A DNA stretch of 64,000 nucleotides from Macrostomum lignano (taxonomy: Eukaryota): assembly GCA_002269645.1 (NCBI GenBank), contig NIVC01001587.1, positions 200,716 through 264,715 of the forward strand. Reading direction: 5' to 3'. The stretch's first letter is position 1. Every line of letters starts with the position of its first letter. The notes beneath the pieces are model-generated. The model worked only from the letters and a program-made list of their open reading frames with translations. It did not search any database and was not told the origin of the DNA. A program made the position numbers and the translations under genes. Shown one piece after another: positions 36,815-43,380 of the stretch.

Positions 36815-36965
36815 TTCTTAGTTCTGATTGGCTGCCAATTTCTCTAGCAGCCACCTCACCTACCCCGTCCTTCCTTTCTCTGTTTTCTGATTGGCTGCCA
36901 ATTTAAGTAGCAGCCACCTCTCTTACTCGCCCTTCCTATCCCTCTTTTCTGATGGCTGCCAGTTT
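36815..36965 (+). repeat. Three degenerate ~65-bp repeats (TCTGATTGGCTGCCAATTT...TAGCAGCCACCTC); the retrotransposon inserted in the third
   Basis: Visible direct repeats at about 36822, 36886 and 36948. Confidence 0.7.
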
Positions 36966-37086
36966 AATCGTTAGCTTGACTTACTTGACTTAGCTGCAGG
37001 GTGGTCCGTAGACACAGCGGGGAGGCGAGGGTCGCCCATTCCGCTAGCCCCTGAAGGCCCGCAGACAGGCAGAGGCGTGGGGCCGG

Positions 37087-40000
37087 TCAGGGTGGTCCGC
37101 CGGTCCGTCCTGCAGCGTGATCTTCCGTTGGGAAGAAACTGGCTCGTCTAGTCGCCCGAAGGAACTGGATGAGCCGTGGGATGCTGTCGGGCTGGCAAAC
37201 CTCGTCAATGGACGGGTTCGGCCCGAGGTAGCGTAGCCGGTCTCTGTTAAAGAAAGGGCAGTGACAGACAAAGTGCTGAGCATCTTCATTGTCGCACTCG
37301 CAAAAGGGGCAAATTTCGCTCTCGAGGTCGCCTCGGAGGAAGCAGTGCCTGGCGAGGTAGCCATGGCCGGTAAGGGTCATGACAAGGGCTCGAATATCCT
37401 TCCGATTCTGGTTCAGAAGGATGTTTCTGAGCCTGTGAGACGGGCAAGGAACCGCGGCACGAGATTGCCGGCAGTTTTGGGTGCCCGCCCATCTGTCCCT
37501 GTGGAGGGAGTCAGCCCAGTCGTCGATCTGACGATTGATGACTGTCAAGGGCATAGGGACCAGGGGGGCAGGGCCGAAAAAAGAGCCAGAGCCGCCCCTC
37601 TTGGCGAGGGTGTCTGCCAGCTCGTTCCCCGGAAACCCTGCGTGCCCTGGGATCCACTTCAGCCTGACAGTATTGCTTCTGGCCAGGAGGTTGAGCTGCC
37701 GGGCGCAGTCGGCGACTGTCCGGGAGTTCGTTGTGGTGTGGCAAAGGGCCTGTAAGGCCGCTTGGCTGTCGGAGTGGATGACAATAGTCTTTCCTCTCGT
37801 AACCTTGGCGTTTAGCTCTGCAGCGCAAGAGCTGATGGCAAGGACTTCGTTCTGGAAGACTGTGGAGAGTCTACCAGTGTGCTGGGCATGCGTGGCAATT
37901 ACGCGGCCGTTGATGATGATGCAGACCCCAAAGCCGGCGCGACCGTCTTTGATGGATCCGTCCGTGTAGCAATGGACCTCCTGGAAATTCCAGTGGTCAT
38001 TGGCAGCATCCCTAGAGGGGATGGTGACCTTGTAGCGCTGAAAGAGGTTGAGAGTGCGGGGTTCGCCGTCAGATAGGACGTGGAGCCCGCCGCTGTCTCT
38101 CAAGTCCTTGAGGCAGAGGTCAGCGTGGGGCAGAAGCTTGCGCTTAGCCATGGCCCTATGGGGCTGGATTCGAATGCCAGCGTCAGCTAGACGGCGGGCA
38201 GTCTTAGCCGCTTCCCTGCGGACAAAGATGTCCAGCGGAGGAATGTTGAGGAAGGCGTTGAGGCCATCGTAAGGAGCAGACGGAGGGGCGCTCATGATCG
38301 TGCGACAAGCGCGCCCTTGCGCTCTCCTGAGAGCCTCTAGACAGGTCTTTATCTGCAGGGCGCTAGCCCAGATCAGGCCGCCATACGAGATAGCGGGCCT
38401 AACCATTGCAGTGTAGATCCACCAGAGGCGCTTGGGGGTGAGCCCCCAGGTGGTGCCGACGGCCCTGCGCAATTGCGCGAGGACTGCGAAGGCCTTTTTG
38501 GCTTTTGTTTGAACGTGGGGAGACCAGTTCAGCCTGTGGTCCAGGGTAATACCCAGACATTTAGTCTGCTTGCAGAAGGGGATTTCCCTTCCGTAAAGCG
38601 TGAGCGGCCGAATCTGCCACTTGGTCCTGCTGGTGAACATGATCGCTGCGGTCTTAGTCTCAGAGAGCCTTAAACCACAGCGGTCCGCCCATTGCTCAGC
38701 AGCGTAGATGAAGTTCTGAAGAAGGTCCCTGAGGGTATCAGGGGACGGACCAGATGCCACCGCGGTGACATCGTCCGCATATCCAACTTTCAGAATGGGG
38801 TCAGGCCGAACATCCCGGAGGAGCTCATCGATGACCATATTCCAGAGAACTGGAGACAGCACCCCACCTTGCGGGCTACCTTTGCAGACGGGGACCGTCC
38901 TCTGGTAGCCCAGCAGACTGGCGGTGGCCGTGCGATGGCTGATCATGTACATGATCCATCTGGTGAGATGTGAGTGCGTTAGCCTCTCACAAAGAGCTCT
39001 TCGGAACGCCTCAAAGAGGACGTTATCGAAGGCGCCAATGATGTCCAGGAAGATCCCCAGAGCAAAGCCACTACCAAGCACGGCCTTCTCGAGTTTATCG
39101 ACCAGGACGTGCAGCGCGCTTTCAGTGGAGCGACCCGCCCGAAAAGCGTGCTGGTTCTCGCTGAGAGGTTTGTTCTTCAGCTCAACAGAGAGAAGGCGCC
39201 AAAGCACCAGTCTCTCCATCAGCTTGACCAGGGAGGAGGTCAAGCTGATCGGTCTGAAGGATTTGATAGAATGGTAGTCCGGGCGGCCTGGCTTAGGGAT
39301 AAAGATCACCTTTGCCTCGGTCCATGCCTGCGGGACATAACCAAGCGTGATGCATGCCCGAAGAAGGCTGCAAAGTTTGCGCAGGAAGCCTGGGCATTTA
39401 ACCGCCTCTCTTAGAAGGGCCGGTACAATGCCGTCGGGTCCTGGGGCTTTGAAAGGCTTGAAGGAATTTGCCGCTCTCACAATGCGGTCCTCCGTGATGA
39501 TAGATGCAGCCAGCGCGTGACCTCCCTCCGAGTGATCCGGAGTGGTCTGGTTAGCTGGCTCGTTAGGGAAAAACGCAGTGAGCATTACATCAAGCGTTTC
39601 CCCTGGGTTGTCCGTGGACGTACCGTCGGTGCGTTTGACCGAGGAGAGCTTAGACATTTTGTCCAGCGTGAGCGCTTTCACAACTCTGGAGGTGGGGCGT
39701 GAGCCCTCTAGCTCCTCACAGTATTGTCGCCATTTTTGAGCCTTTGCATTCCTAACCTGCCTTTTAAACTCATGAATTGCTTCATGATAGGCGGTTTGGT
39801 CTGCAGGGCTCTTAGTTTTAGTTGCTCTGCGGTGGAGTCTCTTAGCCCTGCGACGGAGGTTGCCGAGCTCGGGATTCCACCACGGCGCCGATTTTTTCCC
39901 TTTATAGGCTTTTAAAGGGCAGGACGCCTCAAAGGCGGCGGTTAGCGTCTCTGTCAAAACAGTCGCGCACTCATCCGCCTCTCGGCACGACGTGATCGTG

Positions 40001-40791
40001 AATGGTTGGCCAGGAGACCGATGGAATTCCTTCAGGGCGAGCCCGAAGGTTTCCCAATCAGTATTTCTGGCGTTCCGTCTCCACATAACACGAGTTGCGC
40101 TACGCGCGGCCATTAGGTTGAAGGAGATGAACTTGTGATCCGATAGTGAGGACACTGGAAGCACCCGCCACGCCCCAATACTCTGGTAGAGTCTGGGCGT
40201 TGCGAGCGTAGCGTCGATCACCTCCGACCACCGTCCGTTGTCAAAGGTAGGGGTGGACCCAGAGTTGCAGAACTCGAGGGTCGTAGAGGCAACGTAGGCT
40301 AGGAGGTCTTCGCCTCTCTGATTAATGCCAGTGCTGCCCCAGTGAGTGTGGTGGGCGTTGATGTCGCCGGCAACCATGAGCTCGTAGTTTTTGGCAGAGC
40401 AGAGCTCTACCAGCGTAGCGAGGGCTCTGGGGACGACCGCAGCATCGCCTGGTAGGTAAACCGAGGCAATGAGGGTGGTCTTCCCAGGAAGAAGGTCCTC
40501 GGATTGGATGACGCAGATGTCCCTGTTGGACAGGTCCGATCTGAGCCACGCACTGAGCGTTTTGCTCGCAAAGATGCAAGCTCTGGGAGGCTGGTTGGCC
40601 TCGCGAGGGTAAGTATAAAAACAATTGTAGCCAGCAGGGGCGTTTTGAGGCTTACCTCTGAGAGTCCAGGGTTCCTGGACGAGGATGAGCCCCGGCTTGT
40701 CGAGCTCGGCGTAACGCATAAGGTTGACCGAGGCTGCGACGCAGTGCTGCAGATTAATCTGCAGGCAATGGATTCCCTGGTTGCTGATCAT
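37087..40791 (-). CDS. Retrotransposon ORF2: apurinic endonuclease, reverse transcriptase, RNase H, C-terminal CCHC finger
   Basis: Uninterrupted, about 1234 aa from the ATG at 40791. APE: LVQEPW, SVYLP, GDINAHH, SDH. RT: KAPGPDG, FRPISL, QHAFR, FLDIIGAFD, GSPQGGVLSP, YADD. RNase H: YTDGS, EVLAI, SDSQAAL, WIPGH, GNELAD. Finger: CPFC...HFVCHC. Confidence 0.97.
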   Translation of the reverse strand: MISNQGIHCLQINLQHCVAASVNLMRYAELDKPGLILVQEPWTLRGKPQNAPAGYNCFYTYPREANQPPRACIFASKTLSAWLRSDLSNRDICVIQSEDLLPGKTTLIASVYLPGDAAVVPRALATLVELCSAKNYELMVAGDINAHHTHWGSTGINQRGEDLLAYVASTTLEFCNSGSTPTFDNGRWSEVIDATLATPRLYQSIGAWRVLPVSSLSDHKFISFNLMAARSATRVMWRRNARNTDWETFGLALKEFHRSPGQPFTITSCREADECATVLTETLTAAFEASCPLKAYKGKKSAPWWNPELGNLRRRAKRLHRRATKTKSPADQTAYHEAIHEFKRQVRNAKAQKWRQYCEELEGSRPTSRVVKALTLDKMSKLSSVKRTDGTSTDNPGETLDVMLTAFFPNEPANQTTPDHSEGGHALAASIITEDRIVRAANSFKPFKAPGPDGIVPALLREAVKCPGFLRKLCSLLRACITLGYVPQAWTEAKVIFIPKPGRPDYHSIKSFRPISLTSSLVKLMERLVLWRLLSVELKNKPLSENQHAFRAGRSTESALHVLVDKLEKAVLGSGFALGIFLDIIGAFDNVLFEAFRRALCERLTHSHLTRWIMYMISHRTATASLLGYQRTVPVCKGSPQGGVLSPVLWNMVIDELLRDVRPDPILKVGYADDVTAVASGPSPDTLRDLLQNFIYAAEQWADRCGLRLSETKTAAIMFTSRTKWQIRPLTLYGREIPFCKQTKCLGITLDHRLNWSPHVQTKAKKAFAVLAQLRRAVGTTWGLTPKRLWWIYTAMVRPAISYGGLIWASALQIKTCLEALRRAQGRACRTIMSAPPSAPYDGLNAFLNIPPLDIFVRREAAKTARRLADAGIRIQPHRAMAKRKLLPHADLCLKDLRDSGGLHVLSDGEPRTLNLFQRYKVTIPSRDAANDHWNFQEVHCYTDGSIKDGRAGFGVCIIINGRVIATHAQHTGRLSTVFQNEVLAISSCAAELNAKVTRGKTIVIHSDSQAALQALCHTTTNSRTVADCARQLNLLARSNTVRLKWIPGHAGFPGNELADTLAKRGGSGSFFGPAPLVPMPLTVINRQIDDWADSLHRDRWAGTQNCRQSRAAVPCPSHRLRNILLNQNRKDIRALVMTLTGHGYLARHCFLRGDLESEICPFCECDNEDAQHFVCHCPFFNRDRLRYLGPNPSIDEVCQPDSIPRLIQFLRATRRASFFPTEDHAAGRTGGPP

Positions 40792-40793
40792 TA

Positions 40794-42259
40794 TCACGCA
40801 GTTGGGGAATCGTTGAGCAGGTCATCCTCCTCCTTTTCAGTGGTGGGTGACCCGCAGACCTCCATGGGAGTTTCAGCGTCCTCAGCAGTTAGGGTGGCTG
40901 TGGAGTCCTCCGCGGACGTGAGCCCAGCGTGGACGTTACCGTCGCCTCTCCTGCGTGCTTCGGTGCTGTCACTGCCCGTCCCCTCTGCCTCGTCGGTCAG
41001 GTCGATGCGGGTGGCGCCAGCCTCCTGGTGAGTCACAGACTCGAACCAGTCGGTCGGAGCCTCCCCGCTTAGAGTCTGGCCTTCTGGCTGTTGGGGTGGA
41101 GCGCGAGAAGCGCGGGCCCGCTCACGATGCGCACGAAGGTTCTTGGCCTGGTCCAGCGCGCGCTGGATCAGGCCGGACCTCCGGGTGCTCCTGGCGGGTC
41201 TGCGATTGCGATTTCCGGTTTCAGCAGCGCGAACTGCCTTACCGGGCATAGGATCGGCCGTTTGCCTCGGCTTCTTTGCCGGAGGAGCCTGGGCCCCAGT
41301 TCCGGTTTCGGAAGCTTTGGCATTCTTGGCTTCATCAGCTTTCCGCTCCTCGCAACGGAGGATGGTCAGCTGAGTCAGACCAATATGAATTGTGGACTTA
41401 GGCGGCAAGCGCTTAGCCCAGTCATCAGAGAGCCCTAGGATCACCGTAGCCCCCTTCTCCTTGCGGGAAGTGGCGTGGTGTAGGAGCCCGTTGACCTTAA
41501 GGTCGGGGTGCAGCTTTAGCAATATTTGCCTAAGCTGATCTCCGGACTTAATGGCACTGCCGGCCGGGATCCAGACGCGAAAGCGCTGGGTCTTCTGTCG
41601 TTCGCCCTCGCTGGCGAAGACGAGCTTGCCGAGCTTCTTGGGCCAGTTCAGCTTTGGCAGAAGCTCGCGTAGATTGCGGCTGCTCTCCTCCGAGCTGCAC
41701 CAGATGAAGATGCAGCCGTCGGTCTTGGCAGACTTGACCACGCTCACAGGGCGGCCCGCCAGGAGCTGGTCGATGAGCGCAGCATCGATGGTGCGCCAGG
41801 CACTGTCGAGCTCGTCGGCCGTGAGGTCCTGCTCTTCCCCGAAGACGATGACCGCCGGTTGGAGCTTGACCTTTGAGGCGTAGTTGGTGGCGGCGGTTCC
41901 CGAAGGCCCGGCCGCGCTTGTAGCAGGTATACTGGGTGGCTCACCAGCGGGGGTTGTATCCTGGGGGCAGGGGTTGCTGTGGTTCCTTTCGGCCCAACAG
42001 CAGCCTCGCCCTCCCTAGGTTCCCCTTCCGCCGGTGGCCGGCCCGCAGTACCCCGTAGTCGCCGTCGCCGCTCGTTGCGGCGTTGGTTGCGGGTGCGTCG
42101 GGCTTCAGCGGAGGGCCCGGTTGCGCGTGCGGGCATGTCACCAGCCGAGCCGGCGGCAAGCCCATCTGCCCCCGGTGGGGCGGCGCTGGTGCCAGAGTCA
42201 CCGGCCGGAGTTGCCGGGGCCCCGGCTTCAGCGGGGGTTAAAGAGGCGGATGACGCCAT
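40794..42259 (-). CDS. Retrotransposon ORF1 (DUF4780-like central region by resemblance), with one frameshift near 41963-41967
   Basis: ATG at 42259 opens an Arg-rich N-terminus. The frame of track ORF 40794-41747 stays open upstream (NYASKVKLQPAVIVFG...WRTIDAALIDQLL). One extra G in the G5 run at 41963-41967 would fuse the two frames. Confidence 0.75.
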
Positions 42260-42480
42260 AGCTGAAAGCGGGAAGGAGTGAGCTGAGTCACAAAAGAAAG
42301 AGGAAAGAAGAAAAAGAAAAGGACCGCTAGCGACCGGACAACCCCCCGGCCTTCCAGCCCATCGGCACGGTCAAACACCTTAGGCATTAGGGGGTACGTT
42401 AAGCAGTACCACGGCCTGCAGGCTGGCAAGCCAGACCCGCATACCCAAATTCGGCCGAAGCCACTGGATGGGTCGCCAGC

Positions 42481-42732
42481 GTCGGAGCCCAGTCTGTCCA
42501 GCAGCCCTAGGGTCTGCCTTGAACACACGCGGGGACGAGTACCCTGGGTCGACTTGTGAAACAGCGTGAGGGGGGGGGGTCTGCGGCTGCCAGTGGCAAA
42601 TAGCGGGTGCAGACCTCCCTCTCCAGCCTTGACCTGCTGAATATAGGGGCAGGCGTGAAGCATCGCAGACCGTAGCCCTTAGGCCTGGTCTGTCTCATAC
42701 TTCACTGGCGTGCTGAATACACCTTCGCGTGC
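42481..42732 (-). ncRNA. Putative HDV-like self-cleaving ribozyme at the retrotransposon 5' terminus
   Basis: Hand-folded nested double pseudoknot: P1 GCACGCG/CGCGUGU, P2 GUCGACCCA/UGGG(C)UC(C)GAC, P3 GGG/CCC, L3 UACUCGU, P1.1 AC/GU, P4 hairpin, J4/2 CAGAC. G1 abuts the TSD. Confidence 0.85.
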
Positions 42733-43252
42733 TTAATCGTTAGCTTCATCCGCAAGCGCGTTAACGGCGTTGTTCGAGCTACTTGTATTCGAGATTATTT
42801 GATATTTGACTATTGCAATAAACTACTCGTAATTTCTTTATTTGATTCATATTCCAAGGAACTCATGAGCTACGCGCATTCATCTGATTCACTGAGAATT
42901 TGCGTGAAGCCTTAATTGTTTTAATTTTTGTTTGTTCTGTAAATTGCCCACCGACCATAAGTTAATGATGCGGATTTGCTGCCCAAGCCTTGTTTTTATA
43001 GCACAGTATATATGGCAGTATTTTCATCATGAATTTACGTTAACTCACTTCTATTTTTTACCTTAGCTAGTCAGTGTTTATTTATGTAAACATTACAAGT
43101 TTGCTTCCTTTTTATAGTTACGTTTCGCACTTCGTTTTTGTCTATTTATTGCTTGCCATATTAAAAAAAATGCATTGAAATTCCTCTGAAACTATAAAAT
43201 TTTGCTTTTTAAAGGCTGGCAATGCTTCAATAAAATTATTTAAAATTCATCA

Positions 43253-43380
<128 letters not shown>

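What the first reader, a model, noticed from the sequence alone, without database searches (positions are those of the whole stretch)
42481..42732. Complete HDV-like ribozyme fold forms the exact 5' end of the retrotransposon, with a co-varying P1.1 pair
Seen (minus strand): the first 7 nt after the TSD are GCACGCG (42732-42726). They pair perfectly with CGCGUGU (42531-42525), giving the G1-U wobble typical of an HDV cleavage site. The other elements follow in canonical order: P2 5' strand GUCGACCCA (42553-42545), P3 GGG, L3 UACUCGU, P3' CCC, P1', J1/4 GU, a P4 hairpin (42522-42497), J4/2 CAGAC with the putative catalytic C at 42496, and P2' UGGGCUCCGAC (42491-42481). L3 has AC and J1/4 has GU where HDV has CC and GG, a compensatory A-U for C-G swap in P1.1. 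Established: HDV-like ribozymes process the 5' ends of R2, RTE, L1Tc/ingi and Baggins-type non-LTR elements, and J4/2 C-N-R-A-N matches antigenomic HDV. Inference: this element cuts itself out of host read-through transcripts. I do not recall this being described for an RNase H-bearing flatworm element, but could not check.
Basis: partly seen in the sequence, partly recalled or inferred. Interest (0 to 1): 0.95.

Follow-up and report, generated by a model that had tools for sequence, protein, structure and literature searches.

The report
HDV-like ribozyme heading a flatworm retrotransposon
The first 252 bases of a Macrostomum lignano LINE-type retrotransposon fold into a hepatitis-delta-virus-like self-cleaving RNA that relatives also carry, so it is probably real, but this arrangement is already well known in other retrotransposons.

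Summary
A 5.76-kb non-LTR element (APE-RT-RNase H) lies on the minus strand at 42732..36977. It is flanked by a perfect 13-bp target-site duplication, and its first base, G42732, is G1 of an HDV-like nested double pseudoknot.

A loose descriptor match means little here, about 10 chance cores per 700 nt. A stricter descriptor anchored on element nt 1 was met by 0 of 3000 shuffles.

Relatives give the stronger evidence. Two close elements, L001 and L084, keep P1, P2 and P1.1 through compensatory changes, and the L001 contig starts exactly at the homologous G1. Four distant elements (ORF2 33-35% identical) carry canonical HDV-like cores at the same distance upstream of ORF2. Rfam's HDV-like models rank first on the compact one, though below their thresholds.

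The 172-nt J1/2 is a structured peripheral domain closed by a P1.2-like helix, as in drz-Agam-2 and R2 ribozymes.

Cleavage itself is inferred, not shown. HDV-like ribozymes at the 5' ends of R2, R4, RTE, Baggins and L1Tc (which also has RNase H) are established, so this is a new member of a known kind. Interest is moderate, not 0.95.

The parts
42733..42745 (-). 5' copy of the target-site duplication AGCTAACGATTAA. Its last base, A42733, would be the -1 nucleotide of the cleavage site.
   Evidence: two exact copies in the window, 0 expected.
42726..42732 (-). P1 5' strand GCACGCG. G42732 is G1, the first base of the element.
   Evidence: Covaries with P1' in L001, L005, L012, L014 and L076.
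42554..42725 (-). J1/2, a 172-nt structured peripheral domain.
   Evidence: the predicted fold is closed by a helix. J1/2 is 131-160 nt in L001, L005, L014 and L076, and 5 nt in L012.
42712..42722 (-). P1.2-like closing helix of J1/2, 5' strand (GUG.A..CAGC).
   Evidence: MFE fold. Equivalent closing helices: L001 GCAGGGCGC/GCGCUCUGC, L076 ACCAUAG/CUAUGGU, L005 CCAUG/CAUGG.
42556..42565 (-). P1.2-like closing helix, 3' strand (GCUG..UCAC), followed by AA and then P2.
42660..42700 (-). 41-nt hairpin block inside J1/2. It is the only 5' UTR stretch alignable by BLAST with L001 (88% identity, same offset 33-73).
42564..42568 (-). Second strand, CACGC, also complementary to P1'. It could form an alternative pairing or be a relic of an older compact P1.
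   Evidence: -8.5 kcal/mol against -11.4 for the terminal P1.
42545..42553 (-). P2 5' strand GUCG-A-CCCA.
   Evidence: P2 and P3 appear in the MFE fold. Covaries.
42542..42544 (-). P3 5' strand GGG.
42535..42541 (-). L3 UACUCGU. The U at position 1 and the C-G-U at positions 5-7 are invariant in all seven elements. Positions 2-3 form P1.1.
42532..42534 (-). P3 3' strand CCC.
42525..42531 (-). P1 3' strand CGCGUGU.
42523..42524 (-). J1/4 GU, the P1.1 partners of C42539 and A42540.
42497..42522 (-). P4 hairpin.
42492..42496 (-). J4/2 CAGAC. C42496 is the candidate catalytic cytosine.
   Evidence: The C is conserved in all seven elements. N-R-A is kept in the window and the four distant relatives, but not in L084 (CGUG) or L001 (CUGC).
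42481..42491 (-). P2 3' strand UGGG-CUC-CGAC.
40794..42259 (-). ORF1, split in this copy into 171-aa and 317-aa pieces in different frames.
   Evidence: L084 has one 506-aa ORF1 and L001 one of 525 aa.
37087..40797 (-). ORF2: AP endonuclease, reverse transcriptase, RNase H and a C-terminal Cys/His motif.
36977..37086 (-). 3' UTR ending in an AAGTCA-type short repeat.
36964..36976 (-). 3' copy of the target-site duplication.

Best explanation
Element bases 1-252 (window 42732-42481, minus strand) encode an HDV-like self-cleaving ribozyme of the 'large' type.

Proposed mechanism:
1. The element is transcribed as part of a longer RNA that starts upstream.
2. The 172-nt J1/2 domain folds on itself and is closed by a P1.2-like helix. 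This brings the 5'-terminal strand GCACGCG next to the core.
3. P1, P2, P3, P1.1 and P4 form the nested double pseudoknot.
4. C42496, directly after P4, acts as the general acid. A metal ion is held near the G1-U wobble and the L3 U...G pair.
5. The chain is cut between A42733 and G42732. The element RNA is left with a 5'-OH G1 and with the folded ribozyme as its 5' end.
6. Full-length reverse transcription copies the whole ribozyme into each new insertion. That is why the TSD abuts G1.

Shown here: the fold, its conservation and covariation in relatives, and its coincidence with the TSD-defined 5' end.

Inferred here: cleavage, its chemistry, and co-transcription with host RNA. Any role in translation or RNA stability is also inferred; such a role has been proposed for R2 and L1Tc.
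For: - Coordinates and pairings verified. The TSD abuts G1.
- Anchored descriptor: 0 of 3000 shuffles.
- L001 (ORF2 61% identical) begins at contig position 1 with GCCUGC, which pairs with its own GCAGGC downstream of GGG-UCUCCGU-CCC. The 41-nt conserved block sits at the same offset, 33-73, in both elements.
- L084 (ORF1 60% identical) keeps the core, with GCCG/CGGC in place of GUCG/CGAC.
- A scan that required only the P3 + L3 motif found cores in the distant relatives L005, L012, L014 and L076. All four turned out to have a G-initiated 7-bp P1, a 2-bp P1.1, a CNRA J4/2 and a P2. G1 lies 1680-1970 nt upstream of ORF2, against 1935 nt in the window.
- Negative control: of 40 chance matches to the same 18-base motif in bacterial genomes, 0 had both P1 and CNRA+P2.
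- Pair counts on the seven-element alignment: 97% of cells paired, 15 of 16 pairs changed on both sides, 0 of 500 shuffles as good, slid controls 41-49%.
- On the compact L012 ribozyme the four best Rfam hits are all HDV-like families and start within 2 nt of G1, apart from one 5'-truncated hit.
- J1/2 is closed by a helix in 4 of 5 elements. This matches the P1.2 'pinch' domain of large HDV-like ribozymes (PMC4908430) and the roughly 250-nt J1/2 that Bombyx R2 needs for activity (PMC3774820).
Against: - There is no biochemical evidence.
- Rfam gives no HDV-family hit on the window even at E<=10, nor on the other long-J1/2 forms. L012's hits are below gathering scores.
- In the two closest relatives only the C of J4/2 is kept (CGUG, CUGC), and L084 has a U-U in P1.1. 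Either catalysis tolerates this or those copies are decayed.
- The window's P2 is weak, at 4+4 bp.
- A second strand complementary to P1' lies just 5' of P2 in the window, L001 and L084.
- The distant members entered alignment A6 after a motif search, and I aligned them by hand to the structure, so the percentage paired is partly by construction.
- No TSD could be found to confirm G1 as the terminus in the distant loci.
- This copy has a frameshifted ORF1, so it is probably not autonomous.
Confidence: 0.75

Rival explanations
1. The fold is real and conserved but no longer catalytic in the Macrostomum lineage. On this view it serves as a structured 5' end: a binding site for the element's own proteins, an IRES-like module, or part of an internal promoter that sets the start at G1.
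For: The N-R-A part of J4/2 is not kept in L084 or L001. The 41-nt J1/2 hairpin is more conserved than the catalytic core. R2 protein binds the extended ribozyme, and the first 77 nt of L1Tc are both promoter and ribozyme (PMC6765202; PMC3383444, abstract).
Against: The window copy itself has every canonical catalytic feature: G1-U, the L3 U...G pair, P1.1, a C directly after P4, and CNRA. P1 to the very first nucleotide covaries, and a promoter or a protein site does not require that. These roles are also compatible with cleavage rather than alternatives to it.
Confidence: 0.13
2. The working P1 is the proximal strand just 5' of P2, giving a compact ribozyme like that of L012. The terminal complementarity would then be a competitor, a regulator, or a relic of a 5' extension.
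For: All three Macrostomum-type elements have a 5-6-bp complement of P1' there, and it covaries between L084 (GCUCGC) and L001 (CUCUGC). In L084 it starts with G and is followed by a 2-nt J1/2. L012 shows that compact forms exist in the clade.
Against: In the window it is only 5 bp, starts with C and is weaker (-8.5 against -11.4 kcal/mol). It overlaps the P1.2 3' strand. The TSD and the start of the L001 contig both put the RNA 5' end at the terminal G1, not at 42568. L005 and L076 have no such strand.
Confidence: 0.07
3. The fit is a chance match to a permissive descriptor in a GC-rich 5' UTR.
For: The loose descriptor yields many hits. The fold z-score is only -1.5. There is no Rfam hit on the window.
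Against: The anchored test gave 0 of 3000 shuffles. Homologous elements show compensatory changes. Distant relatives carry canonical cores, while the bacterial control gave 0 of 40.
Confidence: 0.03

Closest known systems
L1Tc ribozyme (L1TcRz) of Trypanosoma cruzi, L1Tc/ingi clade
   Same: An HDV-like ribozyme occupies the first nucleotides of a TSD-flanked, non-site-specific non-LTR element that encodes AP endonuclease, RT and RNase H. Cleavage is at element nt +1, and P1.1 has 1-2 bp (PMC3185411).
   Different: L1TcRz is compact, within 77 nt, and doubles as the Pr77 promoter. The window's ribozyme spans 252 nt with a 172-nt J1/2. I found no sequence similarity and did not resolve the clade relationship.
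R2 ribozymes with a large J1/2 (for example Bombyx mori, Drosophila)
   Same: [quoted passage not shown] J1/2 can reach about 250 nt, and in Bombyx part of it is required for activity (PMC3774820).
   Different: R2 is site-specific for 28S rDNA, has a restriction-like endonuclease, lacks RNase H and ORF1, and is transcribed by Pol I. Many R2s cleave upstream, inside 28S.
drz-Agam-2 family of large HDV-like ribozymes (P1.2 peripheral domain)
   Same: A helix within J1/2 brings the outer ends of P1 and P2 together, the 'pinch' (PMC4908430). The J1/2 domains here are closed by a comparable helix a few nucleotides from P1 and 2 nt from P2.
   Different: The Rfam drz-agam-2-2 model does not hit the window. 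It gives only a sub-threshold partial hit on L012.
Genomic and antigenomic HDV ribozymes
   Same: Same topology. From my own knowledge of the HDV sequence, its L3 is UCCUCGC against UACUCGU here, its J1/4 is GG against GU, and its J4/2 is CGAA against CAGA. Both have a G1-U wobble.
   Different: HDV has a short J1/2 and a viral rolling-circle context. Its P1.1 is two C-G pairs; here it is C-G plus A-U.
Twister-variant ribozymes of Schistosoma mansoni Perere-3 (RTE clade)
   Same: A flatworm non-LTR element whose TSD abuts the cleavage site of a 5' self-cleaving ribozyme (PMC8501958).
   Different: It is a different ribozyme class (twister) in a different clade, and its P1 substrate strand comes from the TSD.

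Membership tests
HDV-like self-cleaving ribozymes | Nested double pseudoknot with P1, P2, P3, P1.1 and P4 in canonical order, with P1' directly after P3'. | tested here: met
   The same order is found in six relatives.
HDV-like self-cleaving ribozymes | Helices supported by covariation among homologues. | tested here: met
   15 of 16 pairs changed on both sides, 97% of cells paired against 41-49% when partners are slid. The alignment was made by hand to fit the structure. The window/L001/L084 part rests on sequence homology.
HDV-like self-cleaving ribozymes | G at +1 at the base of a 6-7-bp P1, usually as a G-U wobble. | tested here: met
   G42732-U42525. G1 is present in all six elements whose 5' strand is known, as G-U in three and G-C in three.
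HDV-like self-cleaving ribozymes | 3-bp P3 closing a 7-8-nt L3 with the conserved U (position 1) and G (position 6), and P1.1 formed with J1/4. | tested here: met
   GGG/UACUCGU/CCC. The U at L3 position 1 and the C-G-U at positions 5-7 are invariant in the seven elements. P1.1 is 2 bp in six of seven. The role of the U...G pair rests on my own knowledge of HDV structures.
HDV-like self-cleaving ribozymes | Catalytic C opening J4/2 directly after P4, in a C-N-R-A context. | tested here: met
   C42496 in CAGA(C). The C is conserved in all seven. N-R-A is kept in five and lost in L084 and L001.
HDV-like self-cleaving ribozymes | Match to a curated Rfam HDV-like covariance model at its gathering score. 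| tested here: not met
   No hit on the window at gathering score or at E<=10. On the relative L012 the four top hits are HDV-like families, but at 16.5-25.7 bits against cut-offs of 37-50. These models do not allow a 130-170-nt J1/2, so the failure carries little weight.
HDV-like self-cleaving ribozymes | Site-specific self-scission giving 5'-OH and 2',3'-cyclic phosphate, abolished by mutating the catalytic C. | not testable with these tools
   Needs in vitro transcription and cleavage assays.
Ribozyme-terminated non-LTR retrotransposons (R2, R4, RTE, Baggins, L1Tc) | The ribozyme cleavage site coincides with the 5' end of full-length insertions. | tested here: met
   The TSD abuts G1 in the window. 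The L001 contig starts at the homologous G1.
Ribozyme-terminated non-LTR retrotransposons (R2, R4, RTE, Baggins, L1Tc) | Many independent genomic copies end at G1 with unrelated upstream flanks. | tested here: inconclusive
   The window holds only one copy. The exact ORF2 product is not on record elsewhere. L005 and L052 are the same locus. No TSDs were found for L012 or L014.

The most novel reading that the evidence does not exclude
In the Macrostomum-type elements the ribozyme may be gated by a four-strand switch. The 3' strand of P1.2 can pair with P1' instead, and in L001 the terminal P1 strand can pair with the 5' strand of P1.2. The highly conserved 41-nt J1/2 hairpin would then be a binding site, perhaps for the element's own protein, that selects the active or the inactive conformer. 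This would couple 5' processing to the availability of retrotransposition proteins.
Probability: 0.12. Interest if true: 0.6.

Novelty: new member of a known kind. Interest (0 to 1): 0.4.

Why it matters
It adds a free-living flatworm and a widespread, unnamed group of APE-RT-RNase H elements to the retrotransposons that define their RNA 5' end with an HDV-like ribozyme. That group is also common in environmental metagenomes.

It also supplies natural examples of both compact and large-J1/2 forms within one clade. These are useful for studying how peripheral domains arise and how they activate the core.

For annotation of the M. lignano genome, it gives a precise marker of full-length element 5' ends. 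It does not change the understanding of how such ribozymes or elements work.

Tried and rejected
- Rfam at gathering score and at E<=10 on the window, and on L001, L005, L014, L076 and L084: no HDV-family hit.
- A covariance model of the window/L084/L001 core found only those three among 85 sources. It is too sequence-specific for the distant relatives.
- Loose or wide descriptors gave as many or more hits on reverse complements and shuffles as on the forward strand. I therefore did not use descriptor hits alone as evidence.
- BLAST of the 5' UTR against all loci found only the 41-nt block in L001.
- Looking for further copies or 5' ends led nowhere:
  - No second copy in the window.
  - The exact ORF2 product is not on record.
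  - P0002 has no DNA available.
  - L002, L086 and L087 lack the 5' UTR.
  - L003 and L085, from the subfamily whose ORF1 carries DUF4780, show no detectable core.
  - The conserved-block pattern is absent from genome contigs and viral contigs.
- TSD searches in L012 and L014 were negative or not significant.
- The MFE fold of the 252 nt has an unremarkable z-score of -1.5 and cannot show pseudoknots.
- I considered the 141-aa ORF overlapping the region (42238-42663) and set it aside without testing it in L084 or L001; the same stretch shows helix covariation, which fits a structured RNA.

Full report
**What is in the window.** ORF2 (40797..37087, minus strand) has AP-endonuclease, reverse-transcriptase and RNase H domains. 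It is 98% identical over its aligned part to Macrostomum lignano proteins, so the window is M. lignano or a very close relative.

The element runs from 42732 to 36977. It ends in an AAGTCA-type short repeat and is flanked by a perfect 13-bp duplication, AGCTAACGATTAA. That sequence occurs only at 42733-42745 and 36964-36976, with 0 expected by chance. The insertion therefore begins exactly at G42732.

**The observation.**
- P1 is 7 bp with G1-U.
- P2 is 4+4 bp around a 1x3 internal loop.
- P3 is GGG/CCC.
- L3 is UACUCGU.
- P1' directly follows P3'.
- J1/4 is GU.
- P4 closes directly before C42496.
- J4/2 is CAGAC.
- P1.1 is C-G plus A-U.

P1 and P2 are separated by 172 nt.

**Is it more than chance?** A permissive HDV descriptor with free J1/2 length hits about ten different cores in 700 nt of this GC-rich sequence. 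In related loci it hits reverse complements and shuffles as often as the forward strand. The fold alone therefore proves nothing.

The informative test is anchoring. With a stricter descriptor there is one core in the 5' region, and its P1' pairs with element nt 1-7. None of 3000 dinucleotide shuffles of the 5' UTR reproduced this, and 0.13% did when J4/2 was relaxed to any C.

**Close relatives.**
- L001 is a Logan contig whose ORF2 is 61% identical. It starts at position 1 with GCCUGC, and 175 nt later it has GGG-UCUCCGU-CCC-GCAGGC-AG.
- The only BLAST-alignable 5' UTR block lies at nt 33-73 in both elements. The contig therefore begins at the base homologous to the TSD-defined G1.
- Relative to the window, P1 changes A3-U to C-G and C4-G to U-A. 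P1.1 changes from AC/GU to CU/AG. The proximal P2 changes C-G to U-A.
- L084 (ORF1 60% identical) starts inside J1/2. It keeps the core, with GCCG/CGGC in place of GUCG/CGAC, CCCAAA/UUUGGG, and a perfect 8-bp P4.
- A covariance model of the three cores finds only these three.

**Distant relatives.**
- Eighty metagenome loci encode ORF2 proteins 29-39% identical to the window's.
- A scan that required only a GC-rich P3 around a U-N-Y-N-C-G-U L3 gave 13 forward hits against 4 on the reverse complement.
- In the 5' regions it picked L005 (the same locus as L052), L012, L014 and L076.
- None of the other features was required by the scan, yet all four have them: a G-initiated perfect 7-bp P1, a 2-bp P1.1 (CC/GG or CU/AG), a C-N-R-A J4/2 (CUGA, CCAA, CGAA, CUAA) and a P2 of 6-10 bp.
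- J1/2 is 131-160 nt in three of them and 5 nt in L012.
- G1 lies 1680-1970 nt upstream of ORF2, against 1935 nt in the window.
- As a control, 40 chance matches to ACCTCCACGTTGGTGAN5GG in bacterial genomes gave 6 with a P1 strand and none with both P1 and CNRA+P2.
- On the compact L012 ribozyme the four best Rfam hits are HDV-F-prausnitzii, drz-agam-1, HDV_ribozyme and drz-agam-2-2. The three full-length hits start within 2 nt of G1; the drz-agam-2-2 hit is cut at its 5' end. All are below gathering scores.
- The long-J1/2 forms, including the window, are not hit. This is expected of models without room for such an insertion.

**Formal pair count.** I built an alignment of P1, proximal P2, P3, L3, P1', J1/4 and J4/2 for the seven elements by hand (A6).
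- 97% of cells pair.
- 15 of 16 pairs change on both sides.
- No shuffle of 500 does as well.
- Sliding the partners by 1-3 columns drops pairing to 41-49%.

The alignment was fitted to the structure and the distant members came from a motif search, so the percentage paired is partly by construction. The window/L001/L084 comparisons, and the features the motif scan did not require, are the unbiased part.

**The J1/2 domain.**
- The predicted folds of J1/2 are closed by a helix a few nucleotides after P1 and 2 nt before P2 in the window, L001, L005 and L076.
- Bombyx R2 has a J1/2 of about 250 nt, part of which is needed for cleavage (PMC3774820).
- Inside J1/2, a 41-nt hairpin (42700-42660) is 88% identical between the window and L001, while the rest of the UTR is unalignable. 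I do not know its role.

**An unexplained second strand.** In the window, L001 and L084, a 5-6-nt stretch just 5' of P2 is also complementary to P1'. It overlaps the P1.2 3' strand.
- Duplex energies are -8.5 to -12.7 kcal/mol, against -11.4 and -13.4 for the terminal P1.
- It covaries between L084 and L001.
- L005 and L076 have nothing comparable.
- It may be a competing, inactive pairing.
- It may instead be the relic of an older compact P1 like that of L012. The R2 literature proposes that 5' extensions create large J1/2 loops.
- The TSD and the start of the L001 contig argue that the terminal G1 is the RNA 5' end.

**Mechanism.** The best-supported reading is a large HDV-like ribozyme that cuts between A42733 and G42732. 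This frees the element RNA from any upstream transcript and leaves the folded ribozyme at its 5' end. The fold, its conservation and its coincidence with the insertion end are shown. Cleavage, the roles of C42496 and the metal ion, co-transcription with host RNA, and any IRES-like or protective role are inferred from R2 and L1Tc.

**Weak points.**
- There is no biochemistry.
- N-R-A of J4/2 is lost in L084 and L001.
- L084 has a U-U in P1.1.
- P2 is weak in the window.
- This copy has a frameshifted ORF1.

**Novelty.** HDV-like ribozymes at the 5' ends of R2, R4, RTE, Baggins and L1Tc are established. L1Tc also encodes RNase H and cleaves at nt +1. In flatworms a twister variant does this job for Perere-3. 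I found no paper linking HDV-like ribozymes with Macrostomum, and the two that mention both HDV-like and flatworm concern twister ribozymes and arthropod RNA viruses by title and were not opened. The library is incomplete, and Ruminski et al. 2011 could not be read. This is a new member of a known kind: solid, useful for annotation, and of moderate interest.

Noticed in passing
window 41744-41747 (minus strand); ORF1 pieces 42259..41744 and 41747..40794: ORF1 of this copy is split into 171-aa and 317-aa pieces in different frames. The relatives L084 and L001 have single ORF1s of 506 and 525 aa. This insertion therefore probably carries a frameshift, or the assembly has an error, and the copy is not autonomous.
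   Followed up: partly
window 42660-42700 (minus strand): A 41-nt hairpin inside J1/2 (GUAUGAGAnnGACCAGGCCyAAGGGCUAnGGUCUnCGAUGC) is 88% identical to L001 at the same offset, while the rest of the 5' UTR is unalignable. Its stem shows one compensatory change (C-G to G-C). Its function is unknown; it may be a protein-binding site.
   Followed up: partly
window 42564-42568; L084 about 72-77; L001 about 148-160: A second strand complementary to P1' lies just 5' of P2 in the three Macrostomum-type elements. It covaries between L084 and L001 and overlaps the P1.2 3' strand. It may be an alternative conformer or a relic of a compact ancestor.
   Followed up: partly
window 42400-42470 (minus strand); L084 165-215: The 5' UTR just downstream of the ribozyme (ACCCAUCCAG.GGCUUCGGCC.AAU..GGGUA...) is also conserved between the window and L084 and looks like a further hairpin domain.
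   Followed up: no
L012 848-968: A distant relative carries a compact version of the ribozyme with a 5-nt J1/2. Its sister subfamily L005 shares the same (TAAGG)n tail and 3' UTR motif but has a 131-nt J1/2. One clade therefore holds both architectures.
   Followed up: partly
window 36820-36960 (minus strand, just 3' of the element): Three spaced copies of UGGCAGCC(A)AUCAGAA, each followed by a purine-rich stretch, lie in the flank directly after the 3' TSD. TRF did not report them at score 40.
   Followed up: no
window 43253-43380: A (TGTC)32 microsatellite creates the spurious [13 protein letters not shown]... about 500 nt upstream of the element on its own strand.
   Followed up: no
L003 1619-3400; L085 930-2633: In some distant relatives ORF1 carries Pfam DUF4780. 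In those two loci I found no HDV-like core upstream. The ribozyme may be confined to part of the clade, or their version may escape my descriptors.
   Followed up: partly
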